A DNA stretch of 63,950 nt, filler included, from Octopus bimaculoides (Eukaryota), in NCBI RefSeq assembly GCF_001194135.2. It is 6 parts of 6 records of this genome, joined end to end, with 100 filler letters (N's around TTAATTAATTAA, not from the genome) between each part and the next. Parts side by side here need not be neighbours in the genome. Positions count along the whole stretch, not along the records: positions 29,437 to 50,352 come from NC_069002.1; 5 more parts are not named here. One strand, given 5' to 3'. The notes under the pieces are model-generated. The model did not search any database. It was not told the DNA's origin and saw only the letters and a list, made by a program, of their open reading frames with translations. The stretch's first letter is position 1. Every line of letters begins with the position of its first letter. A program made the position numbers and the translations under genes. This document shows, in pieces, positions 29,990-47,439 of the stretch.

Positions 29990-31954
29990 ATGAAGAATAT
30001 CAATGGAATCCTTAATTACTTTGGGTTAATAATGAATCGTATATTCCTTCGAATATCCTATATATCCCTTGTAATTATATTATGTCTACTTTACCATACA
30101 TGGTTCAGATTGTATTTACCTCTCGTCAAAACTGAGAATATGTTAAGTTTTATAAGCAACAAGAACAAACATGAGAAAAAATTAGAAAACACATCAAAAG
30201 ACGCGCTTGCAAATGAACCTGATAGATATCTTATTGATACAATTGGTTGTAAAATACTAGCAATTGATATACCTGAAACTAATTTTAACATTAATCGTTC
30301 CTCAGTAGTATGCCCTGGTCCACCAAGGTTAACAAAAGTCGTTGGTACAATTTTGTACGTGGACCAATCAATTAAAGCAGCTTATTACTCGAACAAAATT
30401 AAACGCTGTCAGAAGTGGAGTATTAAACGAGGTAACAGCGATAATGATATTGTCTTTGGAAAACCGACTACCTTTCATAACCAAACTAAAATTGATGCAG
30501 AGTTCAGTGTGATAAAATGTGTAGGATTTAATAATTCCGTCTTATATACAGATTTCCACAGTCGTATCATTGATAAAGAACATGTTCGGAAGAAGTTGAA
30601 GTCCCAGTCTGGTAAAAGAGCTGAAGATATTCCACTTAGTGTTCTTCTTATTGGAATTGATTCAACGTCTCGCAATAGCTTCTCTAGACAAATGCCTCGT
30701 TTAAAGAAGTACCTTCTAGAAACACTAAAAGCTTATTCATTTCCTGGATTAACAAGAGTTGGTGTGAATACTCTACCAAATATAATACCGTTATTAACAG
30801 GAAAACTTTTGAACGAAAGTAAATATCGCCAAGGTATGCCTTTTGACTCAGTAGATTTTATATGGAAAAACTATAGTTCCAAAAATGCTATAACACTTTT
30901 GGTAGAGGACCGTCCGAGAACTGGAGCCTTTAATTTTTACCGCCGTGNNNNNNNNNNNNNNNNNNNNNNNNNNNNNNNNNNNNNNNNNNNNNNNNNNNNN
31001 NNNNNNNNNNNNNNNNNNNNNNNNNNNNNNNNNNNNNNNNNNNNNNNNNNNNNNNNNNNNNNNNNNNNNNNNNNNNNNNNNNNNNNNNNNNNNNNNNNNN
31101 NNNNNNNNNNNNNNNNNNNNNNNNNNNNNNNNNNNNNNNNNNNNNNNNNNNNNNNNNNNNNNNNNNNNNNNNNNNNNNNNNNNNNNNNNNNNNNNNNNNN
31201 NNNNNNNNNNNNNNNNNNNNNNNNNNNNNNNNNNNNNNNNNNNNNNNNNNNNNNNNNNNNNNNNNNNNNNNNNNNNNNNNNNNNNNNNNNNNNNNNNNNN
31301 NNNNNNNNNNNNNNNNNNNNNNNNNNNNNNNNNNNNNNNNNNNNNNNNNNNNNNNNNNNNNNNNNNNNNNNNNNNNNNNNNNNNNNNNNNNNNNNNNNNN
31401 NNNNNNNNNNNNNNNNNNNNNNNNNNNNNNNNNNNNNNNNNNATAGAAACCAAAATCGTCTTGTGACGATTTTCGATGTTTATGCCACGCTTTCTGAAAA
31501 TCTGAACAGAGGGAAACAAACTCGAATGATGATGAGTAACAGAAGCATCAGTCTTATGTCACCAATACCAAGTAACAGAACATGTAAAGAAGCAGAAATA
31601 CCTGCGCAATTCTGTGAGTGTTTCTCAGCAAGAAAGCAAGTAAGTGTTGAAAATGTGAACGTGACCCAAGCAGCCAACGCTGTTGTGAAATCACTGAATA
31701 AACGTTTAGAAAAAGGAAAAGCGAAAAAATGCGCAAAACTGAAATTGAAAAAGATAATACGTGCTTTTAAATATAGAAGTACATACTCTGTAACGTTAAA
31801 GGTGTCACCAAGTGAAGGAATTTTCCAGTCTTTGGGAGAATACCGTGGTAAAATCTTTCGACCGTTTGGAGAAATATTACGAATCAACATATATGGTAAC
31901 CAATCTCATTGCGTCAACACTCCTAACCTGAAACCGTTTTGTTTTTGTGTGTGA
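29990..31954 (+). CDS. DUF229-family protein A (alkaline phosphatase/sulfatase superfamily, N-terminal membrane anchor), single coding exon with internal assembly gap
   Basis: ORF is open from 29894; likely start is ATG 29990 or 30032, before the hydrophobic anchor. Motifs IDTIGCKI, LIGIDSTSR, TRVGVNTLPN, ED.P, NQNRLVT.FD.YATL, RTC..A.IP.QFCEC and terminal RINIYG.QSHC...KPFCFC. 495 N at 30948-31442. Confidence 0.9.
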   Translation: MKNINGILNYFGLIMNRIFLRISYISLVIILCLLYHTWFRLYLPLVKTENMLSFISNKNKHEKKLENTSKDALANEPDRYLIDTIGCKILAIDIPETNFNINRSSVVCPGPPRLTKVVGTILYVDQSIKAAYYSNKIKRCQKWSIKRGNSDNDIVFGKPTTFHNQTKIDAEFSVIKCVGFNNSVLYTDFHSRIIDKEHVRKKLKSQSGKRAEDIPLSVLLIGIDSTSRNSFSRQMPRLKKYLLETLKAYSFPGLTRVGVNTLPNIIPLLTGKLLNESKYRQGMPFDSVDFIWKNYSSKNAITLLVEDRPRTGAFNFYRRXXXXXXXXXXXXXXXXXXXXXXXXXXXXXXXXXXXXXXXXXXXXXXXXXXXXXXXXXXXXXXXXXXXXXXXXXXXXXXXXXXXXXXXXXXXXXXXXXXXXXXXXXXXXXXXXXXXXXXXXXXXXXXXXXXXXXXXXXXXXXXXXXXXXXXXXXXXXXXXXXXXXXXRNQNRLVTIFDVYATLSENLNRGKQTRMMMSNRSISLMSPIPSNRTCKEAEIPAQFCECFSARKQVSVENVNVTQAANAVVKSLNKRLEKGKAKKCAKLKLKKIIRAFKYRSTYSVTLKVSPSEGIFQSLGEYRGKIFRPFGEILRINIYGNQSHCVNTPNLKPFCFCV

Positions 31955-32733
31955 ACCGCTGGTTTCTATTTAATTGTCTTTTGTACACTCGTATATGTAA
32001 CTTAGGAAATGTTTCCAAGATATTTTCCAGCATTATACTCATTCATCTAAATAGCATAACATAATTACAGACAGACACTCTTCTATTAACAACAGCCAGG
32101 ATTGGTAAATAAACTATTGTATTCATGAAACGGGTGTCATAGTTGAGCGGTGCACTTTAAGAATAGACCTCACAAACTCATAGAGAAAGAAAAGAGCACG
32201 AATTCGTTGATAGTTTCTTTCTGAGAAATAATCTTTTGTTCAAAGTATTTAATTCTCTACATTTATATTCATGAGCCTTTTCTAGTGAATTTTTATTAGT
32301 ATTTTTCTAAATAAGGTCGTGATAACTATTCCTAATGTCCGCCACTCAGCTATTTTGCACCCGTCTCATGAGTGTGTTAGATTATTCAAATAAAAAAAAT
32401 TGGCTTTCATTAATGGGAAAGAGCTTAATTATATTTATGCGATTTTATTAAATAAACCAATCAGTTGGAATTTTATTAAATAAACCAGTCAAGTGGAATA
32501 GAAACTCTGATATCTTTTTGATATCTTCTGATATCTACTGTAATACTCCATGGCAGAAGCTGTTTGAAAATAAATTATATTGCATTTCCTTTCAATATTT
32601 GTTGATTTTGTGATTGTTATTTTTCCCTATCGTTCTTCATTAAAACATAATTTCATCAATTTCTAATTGATTGAATGTAACTGGAATTTAGCACATTTTC
32701 TAAATTAAGTTTTGTCGTTACCTGAATAACTGC

Positions 32734-32900
32734 GAAGGTGCGTGGCCTAGTGGTTTGGGTTTTGTCCTCCCGATCTCGAGATCGTGGTTTCGATACCTGG
32801 ACCGTGCGGTGTGTTGTGTTCATAAAGAAAAACACTTCATTTCACATTGCTGCAGTCTACTCGGCTGTAAATGAGTAAGCTTGTAGCGCTCTGGCGTATT
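32734..32900 (+). mobile_element. SINE family C (tRNA head + CORE-like)
   Basis: gtggcctagtggtt..gtttcgatacc..acacttcatttcacattgctgcagtctactcggctgtaaatgagta. Confidence 0.75.
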
Positions 32901-33269
32901 TCTCAGCGAGAATGTTGAGATCTCTTAAACGTAACAGAAACTAATTTGGCTGGATTTAGGGGGTGACAAAATATTTTTAAGGTGTCGGTTATAACATTTT
33001 CAACCATCCTACAGAGGTATGGTCTTTTAAATGAAGTTCAATAAGGCTACATTTTTAAATTTTATGTTTTTGGTTATTTTAGAACTTTATTTTTATTTCT
33101 ATAATTCTATTTATATAAATTACCAGTTTTGTGGTATTTGTGCTTGTGGGGGGTCTGTGTATTGTTTGGTTAACCGTTATAAAAAAGTGACAAGGAATAG
33201 TCCGACAAAAATGAATGTAAATTGCGATGGAAATTAAAAGGGACGATAACAACATCCCAAAATTTCATT

Positions 33270-33470
33270 AAACACATTTGATATCCGATAGCAAGGCTTC
33301 CTATGTAGGTCAAGGCAACTTCTATGCTCATGAAGTTGTCAACAATTCACTGAATTTTGTTGATCCAAACGATGATAACATCCATATACAGACTTTAGAA
33401 GGGGGCAATGGATTCTCGCTTAGAAGAAACTTAGGCAACAATGGGGTGACAATGGGTGGCTTGTGATAAT
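33270..33470 (+). mobile_element. Merlin (IS1016/ISXO2-like) DDE transposase remnant
   Basis: ISDSKASYVGQGNFYAHEVVNNSLNFVDPNDDNIHIQTLEG matches the I.SD.W..Y....Y.H..VNHS..FVDP....HTQ.IE signature of IS1595-family/Merlin transposases. Confidence 0.7.
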
Positions 33471-34309
33471 TTATATACTCATATCTGCATGAACATGCGT
33501 GGCAATACAAGTTTAGAGATTGTTGTTTTCCAGTAAATGTGACTGCTTTCATCAGATACAATATATATGTATGGTTTTTCATGTTATATTAAATATGTGC
33601 ACCTTCTATACCAGTCATGAGGGACCTGTTGCCCGCAGGACTTTCTGAATGGCACGCCTAACCAAAACATCTTAAACTTCTTTTAGTAGTGCATCTCACC
33701 AGATGTTAAGTCATGTCTCATGCGGCCCGCTTCTCTATACATTGGTCATGTTACATAAGTTGCTTACAGGAAATTATAGGGTGTCAGTAATGTCACTGGC
33801 TTCTATTGCAATTTATTTTATGTTTTTAAGAACATATTTGCAACGGTAAACTGCATTTTAATCTATTGTTTTGCCAATAAAGACCTCGCATGTATCAGTA
33901 TTTCATATTTTGCTACTTTAAATAATACTAAGAGTCCTTGTGGAAGTTCCGCTGGTATTTTGAAAACTATAAGATTGGCGATAATTCTGCTTAGAATTCC
34001 AGATTCTCTTTTATCAATCTTTTGTCAATCTCCTGAGACACCGGTCTGAACCAGTTTTCAGGGAAAGAGTAGCTCTGTTGACTTCAGTAGAATATTAACT
34101 CAGAAGGTCAATTATATATTGCAAGATTTTTCATTGTCGAATGCACGAAATTGTTTTTTATTTAAAAGGAAATAAAGACAACACAAATATTTTTTGAAAC
34201 AACTGTACTTTATTTTAATGACAAAATAATTTTGTTTTATTAGAAGACAGAGAACGTTAATGATAATAAATTTGTCCTGTGAAAAATAAGAACTGTGGTG
34301 AACAGTTTA

Positions 34310-34520
34310 ATCACGAAATTGTGGCGACGATATGCATGGCGACGAAACATTTGGTAATAAAATTTTGGCGGCGAAAAATTTAACGACGAGAAGTTTGGTG
34401 AAGGTATGCGTGACGGCGAAAAGTTTTGGTGATGGAAGGTTTGGTGAGAGAAGTGTGAAAGTAACTTTTGCGACGAGAAGTTTGATGACGAAAGTCCGGT
34501 GAGAGGTCACAGATCCGATA
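34310..34520. repeat. degenerate ~15-bp minisatellite (GGCGACGAAAAGTTT-like)
   Basis: About a dozen imperfect units, ending ccggtgagaggtcacagatcc; resembles the internal arrays of non-autonomous DNA transposons. Confidence 0.6.
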
Positions 34521-34539
34521 TTACGGAAATGTAATTAGA

Positions 34540-34660
34540 ATGTCGCATGAAAAAATCCCCAAAACGGATTCTTCAAGTCGATCCAAACGGCAGGAAACGA
34601 AGGGGTAGACCAAGAACAAGATGATTGGATGATATCCATAGTCTCAGTTGGTCACGCTTG
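34540..34660 (+). mobile_element. LINE C-terminal fragment (RTE/CR1-like)
   Basis: RMKKSPKRILQVDPNGRKRRGRPRTR*LDDI motif. Confidence 0.6.
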
Positions 34661-34899
34661 AGAGTCCAACCGGAAAGTGTAATGACGGTTGTTTCTGATA
34701 GGACCCAATGGAAAGAGGCCCGAAGACAACCCCGATTTCCCCAGGAATGTTGGGTGGAATAGTGGGGGTGGCGGAGGAAATGAAAGTCCTGTGAAAAAAT
34801 AGTATAGAATATCTGAATGCTGTGAAAATAAACAGTTTATACTGAAGTGCCTGAAGTGGTGAGTGGTAAAAAAATGTAAGTTATTCAAATGATATTGTT

Positions 34900-35130
34900 C
34901 CAGGTGACCATATATTACAATAACTCCGTTGGCTTGTGACAGTTTCTACAACATTACCTGGATAAAGACATCAACACAGGTGACATCTTGTTACACGTAT
35001 CTATCCATATCTATCTCGTTTAATGATAACAGCAGTAAATGTGCCTTGCAATTAGCATGTTGCCTACCATGGGAGTCACCGGAGACTCCCCACGCTATAT
35101 GTACCGTTGGACTCACCAGTGAATCTCAAT
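34900..35130 (-). mobile_element. decayed Penelope-like RT remnant
   Basis: Minus-strand pieces GESPVTPMVGNMLI (cf. GSP.SP..AN.FM) and DRYV*QD (cf. RYVDD), in different frames. Confidence 0.4.
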
Positions 35131-35759
35131 GGAAATGTTCTTTTTTAGGTTTTTTTTTTACTTAACTGTGGTTCGAAATTCATTCTTCGACTTTTAGGAA
35201 ATGTACAGAACATATTTTTTATTTGAATTTCTCGGGTGGTTTCCAACTTGAATCAATGGAAGCTGAGATAGGATTTGGTAAGACGGGCACAAGCTACTGT
35301 CATCTGTCTGCAACTACCTTTGGGAATCTACAATGCAAAGCCTCCTCTTACCAGTCAGATAATATTTTTTTCTCGTTATCAACTTCATTTGGCTTTTTTG
35401 TTTCTCTGTCCTACTGTGACTCTAGCAGGTCTAAATAAACTTTCTTCACTATTACCTACATAGGAGGCAATACTTACTCTAGCTAACTCCACGTAGTCTT
35501 CTACTGATATTACTTAACCTTCTTCTGATATTACTTAACCTTCTTCTACCTTCCTTTCTGGGTAAGTATATCTTGCTACACCTGCTCTTGGGTGACAGAC
35601 AGACCGGCAGGCAGACGGACGGACGGACGGACGGACGGACGAACGGGCGGACAGACAGACATACAAACAGGGAGGTAGGTAGATAGGTGGATGGGTGGGC
35701 AGCAGACAGACAGACAGAAATACAGACAAACAGACAGACAGACAGAGAGACAGACAGAC

Positions 35760-35809
<50 letters not shown>

Positions 35810-36502
35810 TGCGATTTTTGTTTATTTGATTTGATTTTTGAGACAACAATTAAAATGTCTCTTGATAATATCAGAAATCGCCGTTGGCACGACTCCCCAA
35901 AAATTGTTTTTTGGGAGTCACACGCGCTAACTAACATTTTGCCTAACAAGCACGTTTTGGACCAGAATTCCTTATCTCCTTGTGTACCAGCTGTTTAATC
36001 TTGTTATAAATTGAGCCATTCAGTTATTTTTTTTTTCTTGAGGGATTAGTAAATCATCTAGCACACTCATGAAATGGGTGCAAAGAAGCTAATTGGCGGA
36101 CATTCGGAATAGTTAACACGACCTTATTGAGAAAAGTAAGAGTAAAAATTCACTAGAAAAGGCACGTGGAAATGTAGGGCATAAATCTAAAGAATTAAAT
36201 ATTTTGAACAAAAGATTCTCAAAAGGAATCAGTCAACCAGTTCATAACCCTTTTCCTTCTCCATGAGTTTGTGATACCTATTCTTAAAATCCACCGCTCA
36301 ACTATGACACCCGTTTCATGAGTACAATAGTTTATATAGCAATTATGGCAGTTGTTAATAAGAAGAGTGCCTATAATTATGTTATTTGGATCAATGGTTA
36401 TTATGTTACATGTGTTTAGTTTGATGCTGGAAACTGTCAAGAAAACACTTAATAAGTTATGTGGACGAATATAGAAAAGATAATTAAATAGAAATCAACA
36501 GT

Positions 36503-38323
36503 TTACGTACAAAAACAAAGCGGTTTCAGTTTACGTGTTTTGACGCAATGAGATTGGTTACCATATATGTTGATTCGTAAAATTTCTCCAAGCGGTTGAA
36601 AGTTTTTACCACGATATTCCCCCAAAGACTGGAAAATTCCTTCACTTGGTGACACTTTTAACGTTACAGAGTATGTACTTCTATATTTAAAAGCACGTAT
36701 TATCTTTTTCAATTTCAGTTTTGCGCATTTTTTCGCTTTTCCTTTTTCTAAAAGTTTATTCAGTGATTTCACAACAGCGTTGGCTGCTTGGGTCACGTTC
36801 ACATTTTCAACACTTACTTGCTTTCTTGCTGAGAAACACTCACAGAATTGCGCAGGTATTTCTGCTTCTTTACATGTTCTGTTACTTGGTATTGGTGACA
36901 TAAGACTGATGCTTCTGTTACTCATCATCATTCGAATTTGTTTCCCTCTGTTCAGATTTTCAGAAAGCGTGGCATAAAAATCGAAAAACGTCACAAGACG
37001 ATTTTGGTTTCTATGAACAGAATCGGCTTTTGATTTGTGTTTGATCTTGAACCATTCTGGGACAATGAAAAATAAAAAAGGTAAATTTGCTTCATGACTT
37101 CCAGCGACAGTTGTACGAAATCCACCCAAGCGGAAACCATGATCCCCGAAGAAAAACAGCAAAGTATTGTTTAGTATTTTCGATTGATGAAGCCATTGAA
37201 AAAACCCCAAAAGTTTGTCTTCCCATCTAGCCGCACCATGCAAGTGATTGTGCGTCCAACGTGTGAAAAATGTAAGGGCAAAATAAAAAGACATTTTATA
37301 CTTTTTTAAAAACTGCTTCATATAATGTTGTACATAATCCGTCTCAGGAAGAGGGCCTACACAGAACTCGTTCCGAAATTTGTTCTTCATTGCAATAGTT
37401 AAAGGTCTAAAATAATAATCAGTCGGTTGTTTTCGAAATCCACGCGCTACATAATTGAATGCTGCTATGTAGGGATGGTCCTCTGCCATGACTGTTATAG
37501 CATTTCTTGAACTATAGTTTTTCCATATAAGATCCAAGGAATCATAAACCTGGCCGGAACGCCACTTAGTCTCGCTCAGAAATTTTCCTGATAATAATGC
37601 TAGTATATTTGGGAAGGTATTTTCACCAACCCTTGTAAATCCAGGAAACGAATAAGCTTTTAGTGTTTCTAGAAGGTACTTCTTCAAACGAGGCATTTGC
37701 CTAGAGAAGCTATTGTGAGACGTTGAATCAATTCCAATAAGAAGAACACTAAGTGGAATATCTTCAGCTCTTTTACCAGACTGAGATTTCAGTTTCTTCT
37801 GCACATGTTTTTTATCAATGATACGACTGTAGAAATCTGTATATAAGACGGAATTATTAACTCCTTCACATTTTATGAAACTGAATTCAGCATCAATTTT
37901 AGTTTGGTTATGAAAGGTAGTCGGTTTTCCCAAAATAATACTATTATCGCTGTTACCTCGTGTAACATTCCACTTCTGACAGCGTTTAATTTTGTTCGAG
38001 TAATAATCTGCTTTAATTGATTGGTCCACGTACAACATTGTACCAACGACTTTTGTTAACCTTGGTGGACCAGGGCACACCACTGGAGAACGATTAATAT
38101 CAAAATCATCTTCTGGAACCTGGAACCTTAGTATCTTACAACCAATTGTATCAATGAAATATTCACCAGAAGTGTGATTAGGTTTTCTTTCGTGTTTCAT
38201 CTTAAAGACTGAATCCTTCAAATAGTTCTTAAAGATAAAATCCATTTTGAACCATACTATAGTTAACATTAATAGTCCAATCACAATAATTCGTAAAAAT
38301 AACCGAAAGATAGAATGTGTCAT
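36503..38323 (-). CDS. DUF229-family protein B, complete single-exon CDS (606 aa)
   Basis: Uninterrupted ORF; ATG at 38323 (the track start at 38347 is a TTG). N-terminal anchor, IGIDSTS, GENTFPN, EDHP, FRKQPTDYYFRP, GDHGFRLG, NQNRLVT and the Cys-rich C-terminus. Confidence 0.95.
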   Translation of the reverse strand: MTHSIFRLFLRIIVIGLLMLTIVWFKMDFIFKNYLKDSVFKMKHERKPNHTSGEYFIDTIGCKILRFQVPEDDFDINRSPVVCPGPPRLTKVVGTMLYVDQSIKADYYSNKIKRCQKWNVTRGNSDNSIILGKPTTFHNQTKIDAEFSFIKCEGVNNSVLYTDFYSRIIDKKHVQKKLKSQSGKRAEDIPLSVLLIGIDSTSHNSFSRQMPRLKKYLLETLKAYSFPGFTRVGENTFPNILALLSGKFLSETKWRSGQVYDSLDLIWKNYSSRNAITVMAEDHPYIAAFNYVARGFRKQPTDYYFRPLTIAMKNKFRNEFCVGPLPETDYVQHYMKQFLKKYKMSFYFALTFFTRWTHNHLHGAARWEDKLLGFFQWLHQSKILNNTLLFFFGDHGFRLGGFRTTVAGSHEANLPFLFFIVPEWFKIKHKSKADSVHRNQNRLVTFFDFYATLSENLNRGKQIRMMMSNRSISLMSPIPSNRTCKEAEIPAQFCECFSARKQVSVENVNVTQAANAVVKSLNKLLEKGKAKKCAKLKLKKIIRAFKYRSTYSVTLKVSPSEGIFQSLGEYRGKNFQPLGEILRINIYGNQSHCVKTRKLKPLCFCT

Positions 38324-38887
38324 TTTGTAGCAACAGAATATTAACAAAATATATAATTTTAAGCTGGAGAGTTATTTGTTAGGAGAATGTGTCGTTGAAA
38401 TTATCACATGAAATGTTTTCTGAATTATCTCGTATATTTTTTTCTTTTCATAATCGTATAAATTCCCGAGTGTAGAACACAAAATTCGCAAAGATTTTCT
38501 GAAAATTTCCCAAAATAAAAGAAGTTATACATCTAATTTTTTTGCATTTTAATCCTCTCGTCAAGGTCATGATTCAATACTTGTTTAAATATATGTACTC
38601 GATAAATAATGTGTACGTGTTTGATTATATGTATATGTAAGCATCAAAACATACATACATATGGATATAATTATTACAAATTAAAAGGGTAAAGGATTAT
38701 CAATTTATTAATTAATAAATCAATTAATAATTAATAATTTTTACCAAGCCCATCGGTATGAAAGCACCATTATTGGTGGAGAACTTATTCAAAAGCTCAT
38801 ATATTTATAAATATATGTGGTATATTTCGTTTTGGGATTTGGTTTGTAAGATTCTTTATGTGAGTTCGTGTGTTGAAGCATATTCTG

Positions 38888-39138
38888 TTGTGTCTGGGGA
38901 GAGTCATTCTCTTTTGGTGCCTTATAATTTAACACACTCATCGGTAAAATTTCCACTTATTTCTTTTTTTATTTTTCTAAAATTTTCGTTGCGTTTTGCA
39001 AGCTTTTCGACTATTGAAAAAGGTTGCAAGACGCAACGAAAATTTTCGGAAAATAAAAATAAGGAATAAGTGGAAATTTTACCGGTGAGTGTGTTAAATT
39101 ATAAGGCACCAAAAGAGAATGACTCTCCCCAGACACAA
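38888..39138. repeat. near-perfect ~250-bp palindrome (~113-bp arms)
   Basis: ttgtgtctggggagagtcattctc...gcgttttgcaa is the reverse complement of ttgcaagacgc...gactctccccagacacaa, with only a few mismatches. Confidence 0.95.
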
Positions 39139-39640
39139 AAGTATGTATTTATGTATATCTGCATGTATGTACAAAATAAAGAATGGGACTGCTGAAATAC
39201 GGGCTATGAGCCAATAGTATATATTTCAGTAAGCTTGTGGTGCCATTTTTAACTATTTTGCTCTCGTGCCATTTTTACGTAAATTCATGAACATATTAAG
39301 CTGACAGACCTCTCAGTATCCTGGGGTGCATGGGAAGAGTCATTTAACGAAAAGGGGTCCTTGGTAGTGATGAGAGAACTCTCTCTACAATTATCCAAGG
39401 TGCAAACGAATAACAACGTCGCCATGTGGCAGGTTTAATAACTGTTGAGAGTTCGCTGTACATGAAACCAATCGTAGTCTTGTCAACCCACAAATAAAGA
39501 TTATGTATCCACCAATGCGTTGTTGAGTACTCATTTTTGCTGTTCAATATTAACATTTACTCACACACACATATATATATGAATATGTGTGTATATATAT
39601 ACACATATATATGTATAAACTGAAAGATGCTAGTCGTATG

Positions 39641-40857: not shown

Positions 40858-40956
40858 CTTTAGGATATTCCACATAGCATTAACCATATTTTCGTCTCCT
40901 GCCTGGCCCTAAGGTCGCATTTTGCTGATTAAATTCAGTTTATTCATATGTTCAGT

Positions 40957-41326
40957 GGAGGCGCAATGGCCCAGTGGTTAGGGCAGCGGACTCGCGGTTT
41001 CGATTCCCAGACCGGGCGTTGTGAATGTTTATTGAGCGAAAACACCTAAAAGCTCAACGAGGCTCCGGCAGGGGATGGTAGCGAACCCTGCTATACTCTT
41101 TCACCACAACTTTCTCTCACTCTTACTTCCTGTTTCTGTTGTGCCTGTATTTCAAAGGGCCAGCCTTGTCACACTGTGTCACGCTGAATATCCCCGAGAA
41201 CTACGTTAAGGGTACACGTGTCTGTGGAGTGCTCAGCTACTTGCACGTTACTTTCACGAGCAGGCTGTTCCGTTGATCGGATCAACTGGAACCCTCGACG
41301 TCGTAAGTGACGGAGTGCCAACAACA
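40957..41326 (+). mobile_element. SINE family C, full length
   Basis: ggaggcgcaatggcccagtggttaggg head through ggaaccctcgacgtcgtaagtgacggagtgcc(aac)n tail; homologous to 46174 and 48096. Confidence 0.9.
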
Positions 41327-41789
41327 ATTCGTATGTCCACATTTCGTCTTTGCCTCTGGTCCGTCCATTTATGATCTCGTCTTGAATCGCATTTATATAT
41401 TCACTTTCTTTATTGCATATTTATTTCTTTTGTTCACTTTCTATCATGTTCGGTCCCTTGTTCATTGACTCGCCATTTCCCGGCGGCTTCTTGCAGCCAG
41501 CGCCAGCAGAAGGGGTAATACTATCGTTGAAGGCGTGAAACTGCGTTTGACCCTCTTCCCCTGGCCGACAGCTGATGAGGATTTGGTGGTCTTCTGTGTC
41601 TGTTTTCCGTTTGTGCATTTATGCTTAACACTTCCTCTGAGTATCACCCCCATCTACATCTCCCTTTTCAATCTTGTGAACTCACCCATCCACTTGTCTT
41701 CTCCAATCCCCAGTCCACTACCCCCTCCCCCACCTGAAGCAGCCATATTTTCCTTCTAATGCAATACTCCTTTTTCTGATCCAGACTAC

Positions 41790-42627
41790 TACTCCCTCCC
41801 ACCCCTCAGCTAAAGGGCCTCGTCTTGTAAGTTGTTTGGTGATCCTACTGCTGCTGGGGCCACATAAAAAGCACTCAGTCCATTCTGTAAAGTGATTGGT
41901 ATTAGAAAGGGTAACCAGCCATACCAAAATAGACTCCACCAGCGTTTGTGCTATGTATAAAGCACCCAGTCCACTCTGTAAAGTGGTTGGCATTAGGAAA
42001 GGCCCCCAGCCATAGAAACCATACCAAAGCAGACAGCAGGGATCGATGCAGTCTTCTGACTTGCCAGTTCGTGTTGAACCTTCCAACCCATACCAACATG
42101 GAAAACAGACATTAAATGATGATGACCTTCCCTCCACACACATACAGTTTCTATCTATCAAATCCACTCACAAGGCTTTGGTCAGCTTGAAGCTATAATG
42201 GTAGAAGGCAGTAGAACAAAGTGTAGCATATTGGGACTGAACCCAATATCACATGGATTGCAACATGAGCTTCTTAACCACACAGCCAGGCCTACATCTA
42301 GCTTATAATAATTGTAAAGTGGTAAGAAAGGGCATCACTGAGAAAAAGACAAGGGACTGAGAGCTGTGGTGATTTGCTGTACTTCAGAGGACATGTCAAG
42401 CTGAGTAACACTCTTGTTATCCATACGTTGCCAGTACCGCCTGACTGGCCTTCATGCTGGTGACACGTAAAAGCACCCACTACACTCTCGGAGTGGTTGG
42501 CGTTAGGAAGGGCATCCAGCTGTAGAAACTCTGCCAAATCAGATTGGAGCCTGGTGTAGACATCTGGTTTCACCAGTCCTCAGTCAAATCGTCCAACCCA
42601 TGCTAGCATGGAAAGCTGACGTTAAAC

Positions 42628-42668
<41 letters not shown>

Positions 42669-42900
42669 CGACAGGCTTGTCCTTTAGAGGTGCCGATGAT
42701 GCATAAATTCACCTGTGCCAGTGGCATGTAAAAAGCACCTGCTGTGCTCTGTAAATTTGGTGGTGTTAGGCAGAGCATCCAGCCATAGAAACCATGTTAC
42801 AACAGACAATTGGAGTCTGGACAGCTCCTGTCAAACCATTCAACCCATGCCAGCATAGAAAATGGATCTTAAACTGATGATGATGATGATGTTGATGAAC
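41790..42900 (+). mobile_element. cluster of SINE family D (V-like) copies with an intervening family A fragment (42140-42295, minus)
   Basis: Repeated aaaagcacc..gtggttggc(g/a)ttaggaagggcatccagc cores, each ending ccaacccatgc..gcatggaaa..(gat)n. Confidence 0.85.
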
Positions 42901-43450
42901 AGAAAGAAAAAATAAGCCAGCAGTGGCTCCCAGAAGGGCTTCAATGAAGACTAAAACCCCCCCCCCAAAAAAAAACTAACATATTTTGAAGCAATGCAAC
43001 AAGCAACAGGTGAGAGCTAAAGGAATGTAGAGGCTAAAAAAAGAAACAAACGAAGGACACAATACAGGTGTTTCTGTAAATTCCATATTCTGAGTTCTAA
43101 TTCCAAGACAGACTGAGCATTTTAGACAGAGGTAGAGTCAAGATACATTGGATACAATAGTAGTATTGGTAGTAGTAGTAGTAGCAGGAGTTCAGTGGTC
43201 AGTTTGTTGGTCCTCAACACCTTTGTGTTCAGCAAGTATTTCATTTTTTTTTTGTTTCTGTTGTACAAGTAGTAGTATTAGTTTCATATAGTTGTTGTTG
43301 TCTGTTTGTGGTAATGACGGTGATATAAATGGATGTAGCTATGGAGTTTCTTCTGACAATCTTTTAGATGATATACACACATATATATATATATGTATGT
43401 ATACATACACATATGTATACATATACATATATATATATACATACACATAT

Positions 43451-43814
43451 ACTTTTGTTTCAGTCATTTGACTGTGGCCATGCTGGAGCACTGCCTTTAG
43501 TCGAACAAATCAACCCCAGGACTGATTCTTTGTAAGCCTAGTATTTATCGGTCTCTTCTGCCAACCACTAAGTTACATGGACGTAAACACATCAACATCA
43601 GTTGTCAAGCGATGGTGGGGGGACAAACACAGACAGACACACACACGTCATGCATATATATATATACATGACACACACATATATACCTACATATGATAGG
43701 CTTCTTTCAGTTTCCATCTACCAAATCCACTTGCCCAAGGTGCCACACAGAAGGGACTGAACCCAGGACCATGTGATTGGTAAGCAAGCTGCTTACCACA
43801 CAGCCACTCCTGTG

Positions 43815-43816
<2 letters not shown>
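43451..43816 (-). mobile_element. SINE family A, near full length
   Basis: Tail, internal microsatellite and head all present; part of the core is deleted. Confidence 0.9.
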
Positions 43817-43851
<35 letters not shown>

Positions 43852-43962
43852 TTCAACATGTAGAAAAGTACTCAATTAGCTAAGAGAGTACAGGAACTTA
43901 AAATAAAAAAAACCACAAAGCTTGTTTATCTTTTTGTCTTTTTAGAAGCATCTCTCGTTTAA

Positions 43963-44183
43963 CCTTCCTCATTACCATATTTCTGTCAACATATGCTACC
44001 TTTGTTTCAATTAATTTTTAAAATAACGAAGTATTTAGTAAATTGACTTTCTCATTATTAAACTGGAGTCGAGAATAAATTGTCATGAAATTTTGACGGA
44101 AAATTATAATTTAGACCACTTTAACACAGTAAGCTTATGTCATCGAACCTGGGGTGGTCTCAGGCAGGTTGGTATCAAAAGGG
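43963..44183. mobile_element. piggyBac-type MITE
   Basis: TTAA at 43959-43962 and 44184-44187 flanking cctt...aaggg termini. Confidence 0.65.
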
Positions 44184-44610
44184 TTAAACATTATCTGCTC
44201 AAAGAACAGCTGACAAACAGTCTTGTTTTCAGCCTTCATAAATGGCAGAATAAATTATTCCAACCAAGGAACTTTTGGTAGCTGTAATTACAAGATTTGT
44301 GATTTTTTATTTATTTCAAGATTTTATATATATATATATATATATAGCGAGAGAGAGAGGTATGTGTCTGTGTGTTTACAGTTCTGCTATAAGCAGAATC
44401 AACAAAAAAAAAAATACTCCATCCAGTGAGAGATAAATATCATTTAGTCTACACAATTTACAAAAGAGCTACCAGTAGTTTTATGCTACATAAATCTGCC
44501 AAATCATTGTTGTGTCTCGAATGCATGAACCAACAAGTTATTCTTTTGTAAACTGTATAAAAAAATCATATATATATAAATATAATGTATGTATGTGAAA
44601 CACACACATA

Positions 44611-44649
<39 letters not shown>

Positions 44650-44784
44650 TACATGTACCCATAATTCGTCATTATCATCATTCAACATGTATTCATACAT
44701 AAGGTGTATGTCTCTCTCTCTAGCTATAGACACACACACACATATATGCATACCTGTATGTGTGCGTAGGTGTATGTATATCTA

Positions 44785-44888
44785 CCATCATCATCATCGT
44801 TTAACGTCTGCTTTCCATGCTAGCATGGGTTGGATGATTTGACTGAGGTTGGCGAACCAGATGGCTACACTAGGCTCCAATCTGATGG
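44785..44888 (-). mobile_element. SINE family D 3' end
   Basis: (cat)n-cgtttaacgtctgctttccatgctagcatgggttggatg. Confidence 0.8.
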
Positions 44889-45167
44889 TATATATATATA
44901 AAACAGTAGACAAGCATATGTATATATCCACACACACACACACACATGTATGAGACACAGTATACATATGGATGGGTATATGTGTGTGTGTGTTCCCGTA
45001 TGTATGTATGTGTTATAATAGAACGAGAAAGGGAAGGCAAACTTTTGCCTACAATCCTCTTCATGTCCTCGTACACAGGGGAGATTAGGATCAGCATGTT
45101 GTAGAAGCCTGATAAATCTTATATTCAGTCCCACCATGCATGCTGTTGAATGAATGTGCATGTGTAT

Positions 45168-45202
<35 letters not shown>

Positions 45203-45388
45203 CAAGCTTAGGATGTGTCACTGTTTGTTGCTTTGTAAGTAGTCTCATTAAATAATTTATACATCTTTCTTTTCTTTATTATCATTATTTCTTTATTTTA
45301 TCAATCCATCGGTTGGTTGTTTGGTTACTCTCTCTCACTCTCTCACTCAATCTCTCTCTCTCTCTGTTTCTCTCCTAACGAGTTTAAT

Positions 45389-45549
45389 TTAGTGTGTTTT
45401 ACTAACACGTTTCCATTCACCGGTGACATAGTTCATTTGGAAGAAAGTCTCCACGGTAACCTTCTTTGTTCCTTCTGGTTGTGCTCGAATCTCCTCGTTT
45501 TCACTGAGGCGTATACTAATGATGTCTCCTTGCTCAGGACACGGGTTAA
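45389..45549 (-). CDS. NELFA: NELF-A terminal coding exon
   Basis: Acceptor ttgtgtcatttgcAG|TT, phase 1; encodes (V)NPCPEQGDIISIRLSENEEIRAQPEGTKKVTVETFFQMNYVTGEWKRVSKTH*, matching the NELF-A C-terminus (cf. human ENPCQEQGDVIQIKLSE...VDTVFEMNYATGQW, from memory). Confidence 0.92.
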
Positions 45550-45647
45550 CTGCAAATGACACAACACAAAGCAGCATTAAATTAAATTACAATAAATCAA
45601 ATTGAATCGTTAAGTTCATGTTTAGTATTGGCTGAGTTCACCTAACC

Positions 45648-45715
45648 CAGTGGTTCTCAACCAGGGTCCATACGGCCCTCTGGTGGGTCTATATAAGATT
45701 TTATTGTGAAAATTT
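45648..45715 (+). mobile_element. hAT MITE terminal fragment
   Basis: cagtggttctcaaccagggtccata; same family as 53492-53836. Confidence 0.6.
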
Positions 45716-45727
45716 TATGTGCATCAA

Positions 45728-46138
45728 CTCTTTACTTGTTTCAGCCATTTGACTGCGGCCATGCTGGAGCACCGCCTTTAGTCGACGCAAATCGACCCCA
45801 GGATTTATTCTTTGTAAGCCTAGTACTTATTCTATCGGTCCCTTTTGCCGAACTGCTAAGTTACGGGGACGTAAACACAAGCAGTATCGGTTGTCAAGCG
45901 ATGTTGGGGGGACAAACACAGACACACACATACATATATATACACACACACACACACGCATATATATATCTATACGACAGGCTTCTTTTCAATTTCCGTC
46001 TACCAAATCCACTCACAATGCTTTGGTCGGCCTGAGGCTATAGTAGAAGACACTTGCCCAAGGTGCCACAGAGTGGGACTGAACCTGGAACATCGTCCAA
46101 CCCATGGAAAGCAGACGTTAAACGATGATGATGATGTA
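45728..46138 (-). mobile_element. SINE family A copy (minus) fused at its truncated head to a family D tail (plus, 46093-46138)
   Basis: Direct similarity to the other copies in the window. Confidence 0.85.
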
Positions 46139-46173
46139 TGTGTATATATATCTATATAAATATATTATATAGT

Positions 46174-46500
46174 GAAGGAGTGTAGCTTAGTGGTTAGGGA
46201 ATTCGGCTCATGATCATAAGGTCGTGAGTTCAATCACCAGCGGTGAATTTTTTCCTTGAGCAAGACACTTTATTTCACACTGCTCCAGTCCACTCAGCTG
46301 GGAAAAATGAGTAGTACCTGTATTTCAAAGGGCCAGCTTTGTCACATTCTGTGTCACGCAGAATCTTCCTGAGACCTATGTTAAGGGTATGTGTGTCTGT
46401 GGAGTACTCAGCCACTTGCATGTTAATTTCATGAGCAGGCTGTTCCGTTGATCAGATCAACTGGGACCCTCATTGTCGTAAGAGATGGAGTGCCAGCGAA
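46174..46500 (+). mobile_element. SINE family C
   Basis: tRNA-like head, CORE-like segment, and tail shared with 40957. Confidence 0.85.
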
Positions 46501-46634
46501 CAAAAATGTTAAATATACACATAGGTATGCATAATGATGACGATGATGATGATGATGATGATGATGAAGGAGGACATTAATGATGCCAATGTGATTTTGA
46601 CAATTAATGGAAGATGCGATAATAATATACAGAC

Positions 46635-46734
46635 CTCGCGATCCTGCCATAAACGCTAGGATCAATGCCTTCTCTGGTCGAGTCACTTTATTGGATGTGC
46701 TGAACATTTCCTTGGCTTCAGAAACATGTTCTTT
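46635..46734 (-). CDS. NELFA: NELF-A penultimate coding exon
   Basis: ttgtcttttgcAG|AAA...CGA G|GTctgt; 100 nt, phase 0 to 1; KEHVSEAKEMFSTSNKVTRPEKALILAFMAGSR, the hallmark NELF-A motif; splices in frame to 45549. Confidence 0.95.
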
Positions 46735-46858
46735 CTGCAAAAGACAACCAATTTGGAATCGTAAAAATGGTAACATTAAGAAACAACAATAACAAGACAC
46801 AGATACACACACTTAGGTATCTCACCAAATAACGAGAGCAACACACACACACACAAAA

Positions 46859-47055: not shown

Positions 47056-47135
47056 AACACACACACACACAAGGTGATCTAGAAGTATCATTGGCACATC
47101 AGACAAAATGCTTGGCTACATTTCGTCTGGCTCTT

Positions 47136-47412: not shown

Positions 47413-47439
47413 ATATTCACATTTATCCAAATTAATCAT

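What the first reader, a model, noticed from the sequence alone, without database searches (positions are those of the whole stretch)
29990..38323. Tail-to-tail DUF229 paralogues form a large inverted repeat with mosaic identity (arm-to-arm gene conversion)
Seen: the genes and ~450 bp of 3' flank (to ~32410 and ~36010) are inverted copies around a ~3.6-kb spacer. Identity is patchy. By hand count there are only 4 differences in ~355 nt (31445-31800 vs 37010-36655) and 4 in ~150 nt around IGIDSTS..KAYSFPG. The intervening block (30760-30947 vs 37620-37440) and the N-terminal anchor/stem are heavily diverged (GVNTLPNIIPLLTGKLLNESKYRQGMPFDSVDF vs GENTFPNILALLSGKFLSETKWRSGQVYDSLDL; EDRPRTGAFNFYRR vs EDHPYIAAFNYVAR). 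The 5' flanks show no evident homology. Inference: an old duplication whose scaffold is repeatedly homogenised by intrachromosomal conversion between palindrome arms, while the segments around the putative nucleophile are kept different, i.e. one fold with two specificities.
Basis: partly seen in the sequence, partly recalled or inferred. Interest (0 to 1): 0.7.

Follow-up and report, generated by a model that had tools for sequence, protein, structure and literature searches.

The report
Gene conversion between inverted octopus paralogues
Two neighbouring, oppositely oriented copies of an uncharacterised octopus enzyme gene keep overwriting two stretches of each other while the stretch encoding the catalytic core stays different; this is a clean but textbook case of concerted evolution.

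Summary
The window is Octopus bimaculoides. Two intronless DUF229 genes lie tail to tail: A on + (29990-31954, broken by the N gap) and B on - (38323-36503). They form 2.1-kb inverted arms (30226-32386 / 38162-36052) around a 3,665-nt spacer.

Identity is a sharp mosaic, and synonymous divergence (dS) between the copies varies about 100-fold:
- Anchor/stem and central block: dS about 0.7-1.5.
- N-tract: 0.13.
- C-tract: 0.00.

Both have the same tail-to-tail layout and no gaps.
- In the two tracts, 39 informative sites group the copies by species and 0 group them by paralogue.
- Everywhere else the counts are 1 and 109 (Fisher p = 3e-35).
- Per-segment trees agree.

Repeated arm-to-arm gene conversion on an old duplication is therefore strongly supported, and an assembly chimera is very unlikely.

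The unconverted island encodes the predicted catalytic core, including the putative Thr nucleophile. The B island evolves 4-5 times faster than the A island, but dN/dS stays below 1 and every family-invariant residue is kept. "Two specificities" is plausible but unproven.

This is a new example of a known phenomenon.

The parts
29990..30947 (+). Gene A (DUF229), 5' part of the single-exon CDS: TM anchor, stem, N-terminal domain and the left part of the central block.
   Evidence: ORF listing. Pfam DUF229 E=8e-33. The ATG at 29990 is the one conserved in O. vulgaris and O. sinensis, where a stop codon lies just upstream.
30948..31442 (.). Assembly gap (495 N) inside gene A. It hides about 429 nt: the rest of the central block, the DHG motif and the start of the C-tract.
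   Evidence: Bases opposite the gap: 426 in B and 429 in OvA, OvB and Argonauta. Both flanks are in the homologous frame.
31443..31954 (+). Gene A, 3' part of the CDS, with the stop at 31952-31954.
   Evidence: Pfam DUF229 E=5e-20. Alignment to B.
36503..38323 (-). Gene B (DUF229), complete single-exon CDS of 606 aa.
   Evidence: Pfam DUF229 E=3.6e-104. AlphaFold model with mean pLDDT 85.
30226..32386 (+). Inverted-repeat arm A.
   Evidence: blastn and alignments. The same arm limits are seen in O. vulgaris.
36052..38162 (-). Inverted-repeat arm B.
30311..30750 (+). N-tract (pairs with B 38077-37638): converted tract. ObA and ObB differ at 28 of 429 compared sites (dS 0.13). It is nearly identical in O. 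vulgaris (0 differences over 418 nt) and O. sinensis.
   Evidence: 12 species-type sites against 0 paralogue-type sites. dS values. OsA-OsB 5/429.
37246..37637 (-). Central unconverted island in B, about residues 229-360 (pairs with A 30751-30947 plus part of the gap). It carries the NT(F/L)PN nucleophile motif, E281-D282, PTDYY and H358.
   Evidence: 44 paralogue-type sites against 0 species-type sites. dS 0.7-1.5. Trees group by paralogue at 99.7-100%. Invariant residues.
31443..31917 (+). C-tract as visible in A (pairs with B 37014-36540; the full tract in B is about 37245-36540): recently converted tract.
   Evidence: 27 species-type sites against 0 paralogue-type sites. dS(ObA-ObB)=0.00 over 118 codons. 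Species grouping at 100% and 99.4%.
31918..32386 (+). C-terminal 12 codons plus the roughly 430-nt 3' flank of A (pairs with B 36539-36052). Homologous, but not converted since the species split.
   Evidence: 38 paralogue-type sites against 1 species-type site. K(A-B)=0.20-0.24 against 0.08-0.15 for orthologues.
32387..36051 (.). Spacer between the arms (3,665 nt) with SINE-like and (GACA/GATA)n repeats. It is 18-20 kb in O. vulgaris and O. sinensis, in the same orientation.
38163..38323 (-). TM anchor and stem of B (pairs loosely with A 29990-30225). Homologous only at protein level, with dS about 1.1-1.3.
   Evidence: AlphaFold helix at residues 2-35.

Best explanation
Shown: the window holds two functional-looking, intronless DUF229 genes of Octopus bimaculoides. 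They arose by an old inverted (tail-to-tail) duplication of the whole transcription unit.

Shown: since then, non-reciprocal recombination (gene conversion) between the two arms has repeatedly overwritten two stretches.
- The N-tract is about 440 nt and encodes the N-terminal domain up to AYSFPG.
- The C-tract is about 700 nt and runs from the GAARWED/DHG region to QSHCV.
- The events were independent in the O. bimaculoides lineage and in the O. vulgaris/O. sinensis lineage.

Shown: four regions have not been exchanged since before those species split. They are the membrane anchor and stem, a central island of about 400 nt, the last 12 codons and the 3' flank.

Inferred: the island persists for two reasons. 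Selection removed conversions that homogenised the catalytic core (the 'peak of divergence' model). And at about 70% identity heteroduplex formation across it is now blocked, so the tract borders stay fixed.

Inferred from fold and conserved residues: the proteins are type II membrane-anchored, lumenal or extracellular enzymes of the alkaline-phosphatase superfamily (LtaS/EptA/sulfatase-like). T236 is the likely nucleophile, and D199 and D394-H395 the likely metal ligands.

My probabilities: conversion mosaic about 0.95; island maintained by selection for a functional difference about 0.5-0.6.
For: Anatomy.

Source and orthologues:
- The window is O. bimaculoides. UniProt A0A0L8GXE7 and XP_014777247.1 are copy A spliced across the gap.
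- O. vulgaris (OX597835.1, no N in this stretch) and O. sinensis (VCDQ01004298.1) have the same tail-to-tail pair with the same arm limits.

Sliding identity:
- OvA and OvB are 100% identical in both tracts and 68-70% identical in the island.
- Orthologues are 92-99% identical in the island.

Quartet site patterns:
- Tracts: 39 species-type, 0 paralogue-type.
- Elsewhere: 1 species-type, 109 paralogue-type.
- Discordant sites: 0. Fisher p=3.4e-35.

Permutation tests give P<5e-5 (nucleotide runs, both species, and the polymorphic-site test in O. vulgaris); the polymorphic-site test for ObA/ObB gives P=3e-4.

dS:
- Paralogues: 1.1-1.3 (stem), 0.7-1.5 (island), 0.13 and 0.00 (N-tract in Ob and Ov), 0.00 and 0.013 (C-tract in Ob and Ov).
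- Orthologues: about 0.10-0.13.

NJ bootstrap: stem, island and C-end group by paralogue (94-100%). The C-tract groups by species (100% and 99.4%).

Layered ages imply several events:
- 3' flank K about 0.2.
- N-tract in Ob about the same as the speciation distance.
- C-tracts and the Ov N-tract are recent.
- Between O. vulgaris and O. sinensis the N-tract endpoint differs at 4 clustered sites.

Protein:
- Pfam DUF229, E=3.6e-104.
- AF2 mean pLDDT 85.
- Foldseek finds PbgA/YejM, LtaS, EptC and sulfatases at E about 1e-8.
- Invariant residues D199, S202, N235, T236, N239, E281, D282, D302, Y304, H358, D394 and H395 are kept in both types.

The B island is accelerated:
- dN 0.089 against 0.018.
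- 26 against 10 unique amino-acid changes, p=0.011.
Against: - Copy A in the window is interrupted by a gap. The island/C-tract border and about 143 codons of A are therefore unseen in O. bimaculoides.
- The near-identical C-tract abuts the gap, which is where short-read assemblies are least reliable.
- No dN/dS above 1 anywhere in the island (0.16-0.45).
- There are no expression, polymorphism or biochemical data, so selection on the island is an inference.
- The non-coding 3' flank also escapes conversion, which shows that escape does not require selection on protein function.
- Only two independent lineages were available, because O. vulgaris and O. sinensis differ by less than 1%.
- The age of the island relative to the Argonauta split is contradictory. 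Amino-acid characters say older. Synonymous distances say younger.
Confidence: 0.88

Rival explanations
1. Neutral escape. Conversion is real, but the central island is not maintained by selection for a different function. It drifted past the identity threshold needed for heteroduplex formation and has been mechanically immune ever since. The two enzymes do the same job.
For: - The stem (dS 1.1-1.3) and the non-coding 3' flank (K 0.20-0.24) also escape conversion.
- dN/dS in the island is below 1 in both copies.
- All invariant catalytic residues are retained in both copies.
- GC content shows no special signature.
Against: - The island is internal and flanked on both sides by actively converting tracts. 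It is also as old as the oldest parts of the duplication (dS about 1).
- Early on, when divergence was low, tracts spanning it should have erased it unless they were selected against. This is the argument reviewed in PMC3924837.
- It coincides with the catalytic core.
- The B island is specifically accelerated while the stem is symmetric: 26 against 10 in the island, 5 against 5 in the stem.
Confidence: 0.4
2. Import rather than homogenisation. The B-type central block was pasted into copy B from a third, more distant DUF229 paralogue. In that case the mosaic partly reflects a foreign insert, not an island that resisted conversion.
For: - At 5 island sites A, Argonauta and mostly the ENA homologue share a derived residue while B keeps the arthropod/mollusc consensus. 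There are 0 sites of the opposite kind.
- A protein NJ tree with outgroups joins A with Argonauta at 98.9%, excluding B.
Against: - No third octopod paralogue appeared in the search of 5.8 billion proteins.
- Synonymous distance A-B (pS 0.57-0.59) is smaller than A-Argonauta (0.68).
- The stem has the same age as the island.
- This model still needs post-speciation conversion to explain the 39 species-type sites in the tracts.
- The fast rate of B can mimic a basal position.
Confidence: 0.07
3. Assembly artefact. The near-identical tracts are chimeras or collapsed consensus between the two copies, produced by short-read assembly or gap filling next to the N gap.
For: - The C-tract of A starts exactly at the edge of a 495-N gap.
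- The original O. bimaculoides assembly is short-read based (my own knowledge).
- Three sites are swapped between O. vulgaris and O. sinensis in the C-tract. That could be a polishing error.
Against: - The same mosaic, with even longer identical runs (418-419 nt), occurs in two other assemblies without any N here.
- ObA and ObB still differ at 11 sites in the C-tract, 3 of them within 80 nt of the gap edge.
- The 27 species-type sites in the C-tract are substitutions shared by both O. bimaculoides copies against both O. vulgaris copies.
- The tracts are short (under 0.8 kb) and flanked by unique sequence, so long reads resolve them easily.
Confidence: 0.03
4. No recombination. The tracts are alike only because of extreme purifying selection or low mutation rate on those nucleotides.
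For: The tracts encode conserved parts of the enzyme.
Against: - Orthologous dS in the same tracts is normal (0.10-0.13), while paralogous dS is 0-0.013.
- Both copies share species-specific substitutions, including synonymous ones.
Confidence: 0.01

Closest known systems
Peak-of-divergence paralogue pairs under gene conversion (human red/green opsins; RHD/RHCE; Teshima-Innan model; reviewed in PMC3924837)
   Same: - Linked duplicates are homogenised by conversion over most of their length.
- A short internal segment with the functionally important residues stays diverged.
- Paralogues are closer within species than orthologues outside the peak.
- RHD/RHCE are also in opposite orientation, tail to tail (my own knowledge).
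   Different: - Here the function is unknown and no specificity-determining residues are known.
- The island is large (about 130 codons) and very old (dS about 1).
- The genes are intronless.
- Conversion is confined to two short tracts rather than most of the gene.
Large sex-chromosome palindromes with arm-to-arm gene conversion (human Y P1-P8; primate and mouse X palindromes; PMC8327919, PMC8600007, bioRxiv 10.1101/800185)
   Same: Inverted arms around a unique spacer, intrachromosomal arm-to-arm conversion, and a structure conserved between species.
   Different: - The arms here are 2.1 kb and 88% identical overall, against more than 8-10 kb and more than 99%.
- There is one gene per arm, with a diverged core.
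- There is no evidence of sex linkage or testis expression.
- It works like these palindromes but does not meet their definition.
Islands of divergence in converting paralogues of GOT1 in the copepod Tigriopus (PMC3728101), and Drosophila duplicates (PMC2588116)
   Same: Invertebrate enzyme paralogues with mosaic conversion and persistent divergent islands, read as candidate targets of selection.
   Different: Different gene family and taxon. Here the pattern is replicated across species with identical tract borders.
Suggested gene conversion in octopod reflectin and tyrosinase clusters (Argonauta argo genome, PMC9635652)
   Same: Concerted evolution of clustered paralogues in an octopod.
   Different: Those are tandem multi-exon clusters inferred from within-species similarity. 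Here there is an inverted two-gene pair tested with orthologous loci.
Alkaline-phosphatase-superfamily transferases and hydrolases: LtaS, EptA/EptC, PbgA(YejM), type I sulfatases
   Same: - The predicted fold matches (Foldseek E about 1e-8).
- There is an Asp after the first core strand (D199).
- There is a Thr at the start of a helix (T236).
- There is a D-H pair after a core strand (D394-H395).
   Different: - Only 10-15% sequence identity.
- An extra N-terminal beta domain and a C-terminal domain.
- A Thr rather than the Cys/Ser-formylglycine motif of sulfatases.
- An animal type II membrane protein.
- No activity is known for any DUF229 member.

Membership tests
Pfam DUF229 (PF02995) | Match to the family HMM above the gathering score (25 bits). 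| tested here: met
   B scores 349.7 bits, E=3.6e-104, over profile positions 71-495 of 496. The two pieces of A score 114 and 72 bits.
Alkaline-phosphatase superfamily (LtaS/EptA/sulfatase-like) | Core alpha/beta fold shared with solved members. | tested here: met
   The AF2 model has mean pLDDT 85 and pTM 0.84. Foldseek against the PDB gave 246 hits at E<=1e-3; the top hits are PbgA/YejM, LtaS/LtaP, GALNS, EptC and S1 sulfatases, at probability 1.00 and target-normalised TM-score 0.31-0.55 (mostly 0.4-0.55). Pfam Sulfatase and Phosphodiest matches fall just below their cut-offs.
Alkaline-phosphatase superfamily (LtaS/EptA/sulfatase-like) | Metal-ligand Asp/Glu after the first core strand, a nucleophile Ser/Thr/fGly at a helix N-terminus, and a D-H metal pair. 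| tested here: inconclusive
   Candidates are conserved across 24 homologues and sit in the expected secondary-structure positions. These are D199 after strand 192-198, T236 at the start of helix 236-245, and D394-H395 after strand 387-393. No residue-level superposition or metal site was examined.
Alkaline-phosphatase superfamily (LtaS/EptA/sulfatase-like) | Phospho- or sulfo-transfer or hydrolysis activity. | not testable with these tools
   No biochemical data for any DUF229 protein were found.
Concerted evolution by interlocus (arm-to-arm) gene conversion | Within the tract, paralogues of one species are closer than orthologues between species. | tested here: met
   C-tract: (ObA,ObB) at 100% and (OvA,OvB) at 99.4% bootstrap. 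There are 39 species-type against 0 paralogue-type sites in the tracts.
Concerted evolution by interlocus (arm-to-arm) gene conversion | Flanking segments of the same genes follow orthology, so independent duplication is excluded. | tested here: met
   Stem, island, C-end and 3' flank hold 109 paralogue-type against 1 species-type site. Arm limits are shared between species.
Concerted evolution by interlocus (arm-to-arm) gene conversion | Synonymous divergence is heterogeneous along the gene and identical runs are longer than chance allows. | tested here: met
   dS ranges from 0.00 to 1.5 between segments. Permutation P<5e-5 (nucleotide runs, both species, and the polymorphic-site test in O. 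vulgaris); 3e-4 for the polymorphic-site test in O. bimaculoides.
Concerted evolution by interlocus (arm-to-arm) gene conversion | The pattern is reproducible in independent assemblies. | tested here: met
   O. vulgaris OX597835.1 and O. sinensis VCDQ01004298.1 show the same mosaic and have no N in the locus.
Selection-maintained 'peak of divergence' (Teshima-Innan) | An internal island of high divergence flanked on both sides by converting sequence. | tested here: met
   The island at B 37637-37246 lies between the N-tract and the C-tract.
Selection-maintained 'peak of divergence' (Teshima-Innan) | Evidence that the island carries a selected functional difference. | tested here: inconclusive
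   The island holds the catalytic-core motifs, and B is accelerated: dN 0.089 against 0.018, and 26 against 10 changes with p=0.011. But dN/dS is 0.16-0.45, and there are no functional or polymorphism data.
Large near-identical palindromes (mammalian sex-chromosome type) | Arms longer than about 8-10 kb with more than 99% arm-to-arm identity. | tested here: not met
   The arms are 2.1 kb and 88% identical overall. Only 0.4-0.7-kb tracts exceed 98%.

The most novel reading that the evidence does not exclude
The central island may be an adaptive, neofunctionalised catalytic core. On this reading, selection has defended about 130 codons carrying the nucleophile and substrate-facing loops against conversion since before the Octopus/Argonauta split. 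The rest of the enzyme is kept interchangeable. The locus would then be a natural domain-swap experiment that pinpoints the specificity determinants of the wholly uncharacterised DUF229 family.

A more remote reading is also not excluded. Read-through transcription across the convergent pair would make a 2-kb hairpin RNA with perfect 400-700-bp stems. That could be a substrate for the heavy A-to-I editing or small-RNA pathways of octopus. I put that at no more than 0.05.
Probability: 0.45. Interest if true: 0.5.

Novelty: new member of a known kind. Interest (0 to 1): 0.35.

Why it matters
This is an unusually clean invertebrate example of mosaic concerted evolution. The tract borders are sharp and conserved across species, conversion events are independent in two lineages, and an old internal island sits on the predicted catalytic core.

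Three practical points follow:
- Whole-gene trees or whole-gene dS for this pair are meaningless. They would date the duplication anywhere from "yesterday" to "ancient".
- The public O. bimaculoides models of copy A (A0A0L8GXE7, XP_014777247.1) are gap-spliced artefacts. They lack about 143 residues, including the DHG motif.
- The island marks the residues to swap when someone first assays a DUF229 enzyme.

It does not reveal a new mechanism.

Tried and rejected
- **Literature on DUF229.** Most hits are other DUF numbers. The true hits only list the domain, for example an expansion in bivalves (PMC8059625). No function is known.
- **PDB sequence search.** It gave only a marginal sulfatase hit, 9bba at E=0.05. 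A fold search was needed.
- **tRNA and Rfam scans of the whole piece.** Nothing found. ORFs in 38.4-50.3 kb are repeat-derived noise.
- **Spacer inversion as a sign of crossover between arms.** Not seen. The spacer has the same orientation in O. bimaculoides, O. vulgaris and O. sinensis.
- **GC-biased conversion.** GC is 0.35-0.38 in the tracts against 0.31-0.40 elsewhere. No signal.
- **Loss of a catalytic residue in B (FFTDW to FFTRW).** Rejected. That column is variable across the family (N, S, A, R), and the neighbouring invariant His is kept.
- **Dating the island relative to Argonauta.**
  - My first nucleotide NJ tree suggested that A and B are sisters.
  - Protein NJ with outgroups and polarised characters suggest that B is older.
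  - Synonymous distances are near saturation.
  - I leave this unresolved.
- **Second copy near the Argonauta or ENA homologue.** None within 10 kb on either side.
- **Biopython bootstrap.** It timed out and was replaced by my own NJ code.
- **Second and third large protein searches.** The first returned no further octopod sequences although the tracts are 93-100% conserved.

Full report
**What is in the window.**
- The usable piece is 29437-50352, with N gaps at 30948-31442 and 48344-48870.
- Two long ORFs face each other tail to tail.
  - Gene A is on the + strand. Its ATG is at 29990 and its stop at 31952-31954. It is interrupted by the first gap.
  - Gene B is on the - strand at 38323-36503. 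It encodes 606 aa and is uninterrupted.
- Both genes are single exons and both match Pfam DUF229. B scores E=3.6e-104. The two pieces of A score 8e-33 and 5e-20.
- The arms of the inverted repeat are 30226-32386 and 38162-36052.
  - There are no indels inside the coding part.
  - Homology continues about 430 nt past the stop codons.
  - The spacer is 32387-36051 (3,665 nt).
- Upstream of about 30190 / 38200 only faint protein-level similarity of the membrane anchors remains.

**The gap, tested first.**
- The gap edges 30947 and 31443 pair with B 37441 and 37014.
- They sit at codon positions 1 and 2 in both genes, so each flank is open in the frame homologous to B.
- B has 426 nt opposite the gap. 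O. vulgaris A, O. vulgaris B and Argonauta each have 429 nt.
- The 495 N are therefore an over-estimate whose divisibility by 3 is fortuitous.
- Physical continuity cannot be proved from the window.
- The gap hides about 143 codons of A. These include the right half of the divergent block, the DHG motif and the start of the C-terminal near-identical tract.
- The public models of copy A (UniProt A0A0L8GXE7, 497 aa; RefSeq XP_014777247.1, 519 aa) simply splice across the gap. They also identify the window as Octopus bimaculoides.

**The mosaic.**
- Identity between arms, in A coordinates:

| Segment (A coordinates) | Identity A vs B |
|---|---|
| 30226-30310 | about 72-86% |
| 30311-30750 (N-tract) | about 94% |
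| 30751-30947 (left part of the central island) | about 70% |
| 31443-31836 | 98.7% |
| to 31917 (end of the C-tract) | falling to about 92% |
| last 12 codons and 3' flank | about 80%, with indels |

- Shuffling the 200 differences never produced an identical run as long as the observed 182 nt. The longest shuffled run was 115 nt, so P<5e-5.

**The decisive comparison.**
- A protein search returned the orthologues.
  - O. vulgaris: CAI9739028.1 (B-type) and CAI9739025.1 (A-type), on OX597835.1.
  - O. sinensis: XP_029657267.1 (B-type) and XP_029657266.1 (A-type), on VCDQ01004298.1.
- In both species the genes are again tail to tail with the same arm limits. The spacer is 18-20 kb, and there are no N in the locus.
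- O. vulgaris A and B are 100% identical over 418-419-nt runs in both tracts.
- The same two copies are only 68-70% identical in the island, where orthologues are 92-99% identical.
- Site patterns for the quartet ObA, ObB, OvA, OvB. "Species-type" means the two copies of one species share a base. "Paralogue-type" means orthologues share it.

| Segment | Species-type | Paralogue-type |
|---|---|---|
| Stem edge | 0 | 27 |
| N-tract | 12 | 0 |
| Island | 0 | 44 |
| C-tract | 27 | 0 |
| C-end and 3' flank | 1 | 38 |

- No discordant site occurs. Fisher p=3.4e-35.
- NJ bootstrap gives the same answer.
  - Stem, island and C-end group by paralogue at 94-100%.
  - The C-tract groups by species at 100% and 99.4%.
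  - In the N-tract OvA+OvB join at 100%. ObA and ObB form an unresolved trichotomy with them.
- O. sinensis repeats the pattern. OsA and OsB differ at 5/429, 125/401, 6/706 and 92/435 sites in the N-tract, island, C-tract and 3' part.

**Synonymous divergence.**

| Comparison and segment | dS |
|---|---|
| Paralogues, stem | 1.1-1.3 |
| Paralogues, island | 0.7-1.5 |
| Paralogues, N-tract (Ob / Ov) | 0.13 / 0.00 |
| Paralogues, main C-tract, 118 codons (Ob / Ov) | 0.00 / 0.013 |
| Orthologues, all segments | about 0.10-0.13 |

- The 3' flank has K(A-B) of 0.20-0.24, against 0.08 (A) and 0.15 (B) between orthologues.
It is clearly not met.
- The different ages imply at least four or five separate events:
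  - an older homogenisation that included the 3' flank;
  - an N-tract event at about the time of the bimaculoides/vulgaris split;
  - recent N- and C-tract events in the vulgaris/sinensis lineage;
  - a recent C-tract event in O. bimaculoides.
- Between O. vulgaris and O. sinensis, which differ by less than 1%, two further things are seen.
  - The N-tract endpoint differs at four clustered sites, where OsA carries the B state.
  - Three C-tract sites are reciprocally swapped between the copies.
- This suggests that exchange is still going on. Polishing errors cannot be excluded for the swapped sites.

**What the genes encode.**
- The AlphaFold model of B has mean pLDDT 85. It shows:
  - an N-terminal helix at residues 2-35, the membrane anchor;
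  - a beta-rich N-terminal domain;
  - an alpha/beta core;
  - a C-terminal domain.
- Foldseek against the PDB finds PbgA/YejM, LtaS/LtaP, EptC and many type I sulfatases at E about 1e-8.
- This agrees with sub-threshold Pfam Sulfatase and Phosphodiest matches. The protein belongs to the alkaline-phosphatase superfamily.
- In an alignment of 24 homologues the following residues are invariant or nearly so: D199, S202, N235, T236, N239, E281, D282, D302, Y304, H358, D394 and H395. All are kept in both A and B types.
- T236 opens helix 236-245. D199 follows strand 192-198. D394-H395 follow strand 387-393. This geometry is the one expected for the nucleophile and metal ligands. That reading is an inference from knowledge of the superfamily, not a superposition.
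- The island covers about residues 229-360 and carries T236, E281-D282, the PTDYY motif and H358. D199 and D394-H395 lie in the converted tracts.

**Is the island kept different by selection?**
- Evidence for selection:
  - The island is internal, with converting sequence on both sides, and is as old as the duplication. The peak-of-divergence model treats this as the signature of selection against conversion (PMC3924837).
  - It coincides with the catalytic core.
  - The B island evolves faster than the A island. Since the species split, dN is 0.089 against 0.018, and amino-acid differences are 12 against 3 in 71 codons. Relative-rate counts are 26 against 10 (p=0.011), while the stem is symmetric at 5 against 5.
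- Evidence against, or neutral:
  - dN/dS is 0.16 for A and 0.30-0.45 for B, never above 1.
  - No catalytic residue differs between the copies.
  - The non-coding 3' flank and the stem also escape conversion.
  - At 70% identity conversion is blocked whatever selection does.
- I rate selection-maintained divergence at about 0.5-0.6. "Two specificities" is unproven.

**Age of the duplication.**
- It is about ten times older than the bimaculoides/vulgaris split (dS about 1.1-1.3 against 0.10-0.13).
- Whether it predates the Argonauta split is unresolved.
  - Protein NJ with arthropod and mollusc outgroups joins A with Argonauta at 98.9%, excluding B.
  - At five island sites A, Argonauta and mostly an unidentified ENA homologue share derived residues while B keeps the family consensus. 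No site shows the reverse.
  - Yet synonymous distance A-B (pS 0.57-0.59) is smaller than A-Argonauta (0.68).
  - The fast rate of B can also mimic a basal position.
- Argonauta hians has only an A-type gene within 21.6 kb.
- The B island might have been imported from a third paralogue. That is not excluded, but nothing supports it, because no donor was found.

**Rivals.**
- An assembly chimera is very unlikely.
  - The pattern is stronger in two gap-free assemblies.
  - ObA and ObB still differ at 11 C-tract sites, three of them within 80 nt of the gap.
  - The 27 species-type sites are real shared substitutions.
- Selective constraint without recombination is excluded, because orthologue dS far exceeds paralogue dS in the same codons.
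- Independent duplications are excluded by the paralogue-type segments on both sides of each tract and by the shared arm limits.

**Comparison with what is known, and novelty.**
- Mechanistically this is interlocus gene conversion between inverted repeats with a persistent divergence peak.
- It is the same kind of system as the following:
  - red/green opsins and RHD/RHCE (PMC3924837);
  - Drosophila duplicates (PMC2588116);
  - Tigriopus GOT1 (PMC3728101).
- It works like the arm-to-arm conversion of sex-chromosome palindromes (PMC8327919, PMC8600007). It does not meet their definition, because the arms are 2.1 kb and 88% identical overall.
- Gene conversion has already been suggested in octopod reflectin and tyrosinase clusters (PMC9635652).
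- I found nothing about this locus or about DUF229 function.
- It is a new member of a known kind. It is tidy and useful for annotation and for designing the first DUF229 assays, but it is not surprising to a specialist.

**Caveats.**
- Only two truly independent lineages were available.
- Copy A is incomplete in the window.
- NJ and Nei-Gojobori estimates were used rather than likelihood models.
- No expression, population or biochemical data exist.

Noticed in passing
window 29990-31954 (gene A) and the public models: Public O. bimaculoides models of copy A (A0A0L8GXE7, 497 aa; XP_014777247.1, 519 aa) splice across the N gap and start at an upstream ATG (29894). They lack about 143 residues, including the DHG motif. 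The O. vulgaris model CAI9739025.1 (582 aa) starts at an internal Met and lacks the membrane anchor. O. sinensis XP_029657266.1 (633 aa) has the anchor.
   Followed up: yes
O. vulgaris versus O. sinensis arms, at ObB-equivalent 37646-37631, 37200, 37134 and 36959 (L001/L002 versus L005/L006): At four clustered sites on the N-tract/island border, O. sinensis A carries the B state where O. vulgaris A keeps the A state, so the conversion endpoint is shifted. At three C-tract sites the A and B states are reciprocally swapped between the two species. This is either a double exchange or a polishing artefact.
   Followed up: partly
window 32387-36051 versus the O. vulgaris and O. sinensis spacers: The spacer is 3.7 kb in O. 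bimaculoides but 18-20 kb in O. vulgaris and O. sinensis. It is colinear in the same orientation, apart from a small local inverted match at 35308-36012. The difference is mostly interspersed repeats.
   Followed up: partly
window 35592-35818: A long compound microsatellite, (GACG/GACA/GATA)n, lies in the spacer just outside arm B.
   Followed up: no
window 38882-39144: A hairpin-like inverted repeat (105-nt arms, 90% complementary, 53-nt loop, with a nested 42-nt pair) lies about 560 nt upstream of gene B. It also matches O. vulgaris sequence about 5 kb upstream of gene A in both orientations, so it is probably a MITE-like element.
   Followed up: no
window 40950-49400: There is a dense field of SINE-like interspersed repeats in both orientations, for example 40994-41137 / 48147-48289 and 45993-46091 / 47266-47364 / 49039-49143. 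Copies also occur throughout the O. vulgaris locus. A second assembly gap lies at 48344-48870. There are no credible genes, tRNAs or Rfam hits.
   Followed up: partly
L003 (Argonauta hians BAAFZT010000065.1) and L004 (ENA ERZ21867824 ctg113289l): Argonauta has a single intact, intronless A-type gene. The full ORF starts upstream of the 'partial' annotation, and the gene lies between LURAP-like and NELF-A genes. An unidentified ENA contig carries a 45%-identical intronless homologue with the A-type EDRPRTGAFN motif. On that contig the deposited 681-aa product reads through a stop.
   Followed up: partly
window 31443-31800: All four ObA/ObB differences in the most recently converted stretch are non-synonymous (I/F, V/F, T/I, R/L) and none is synonymous. 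The count is too small to be significant.
   Followed up: no
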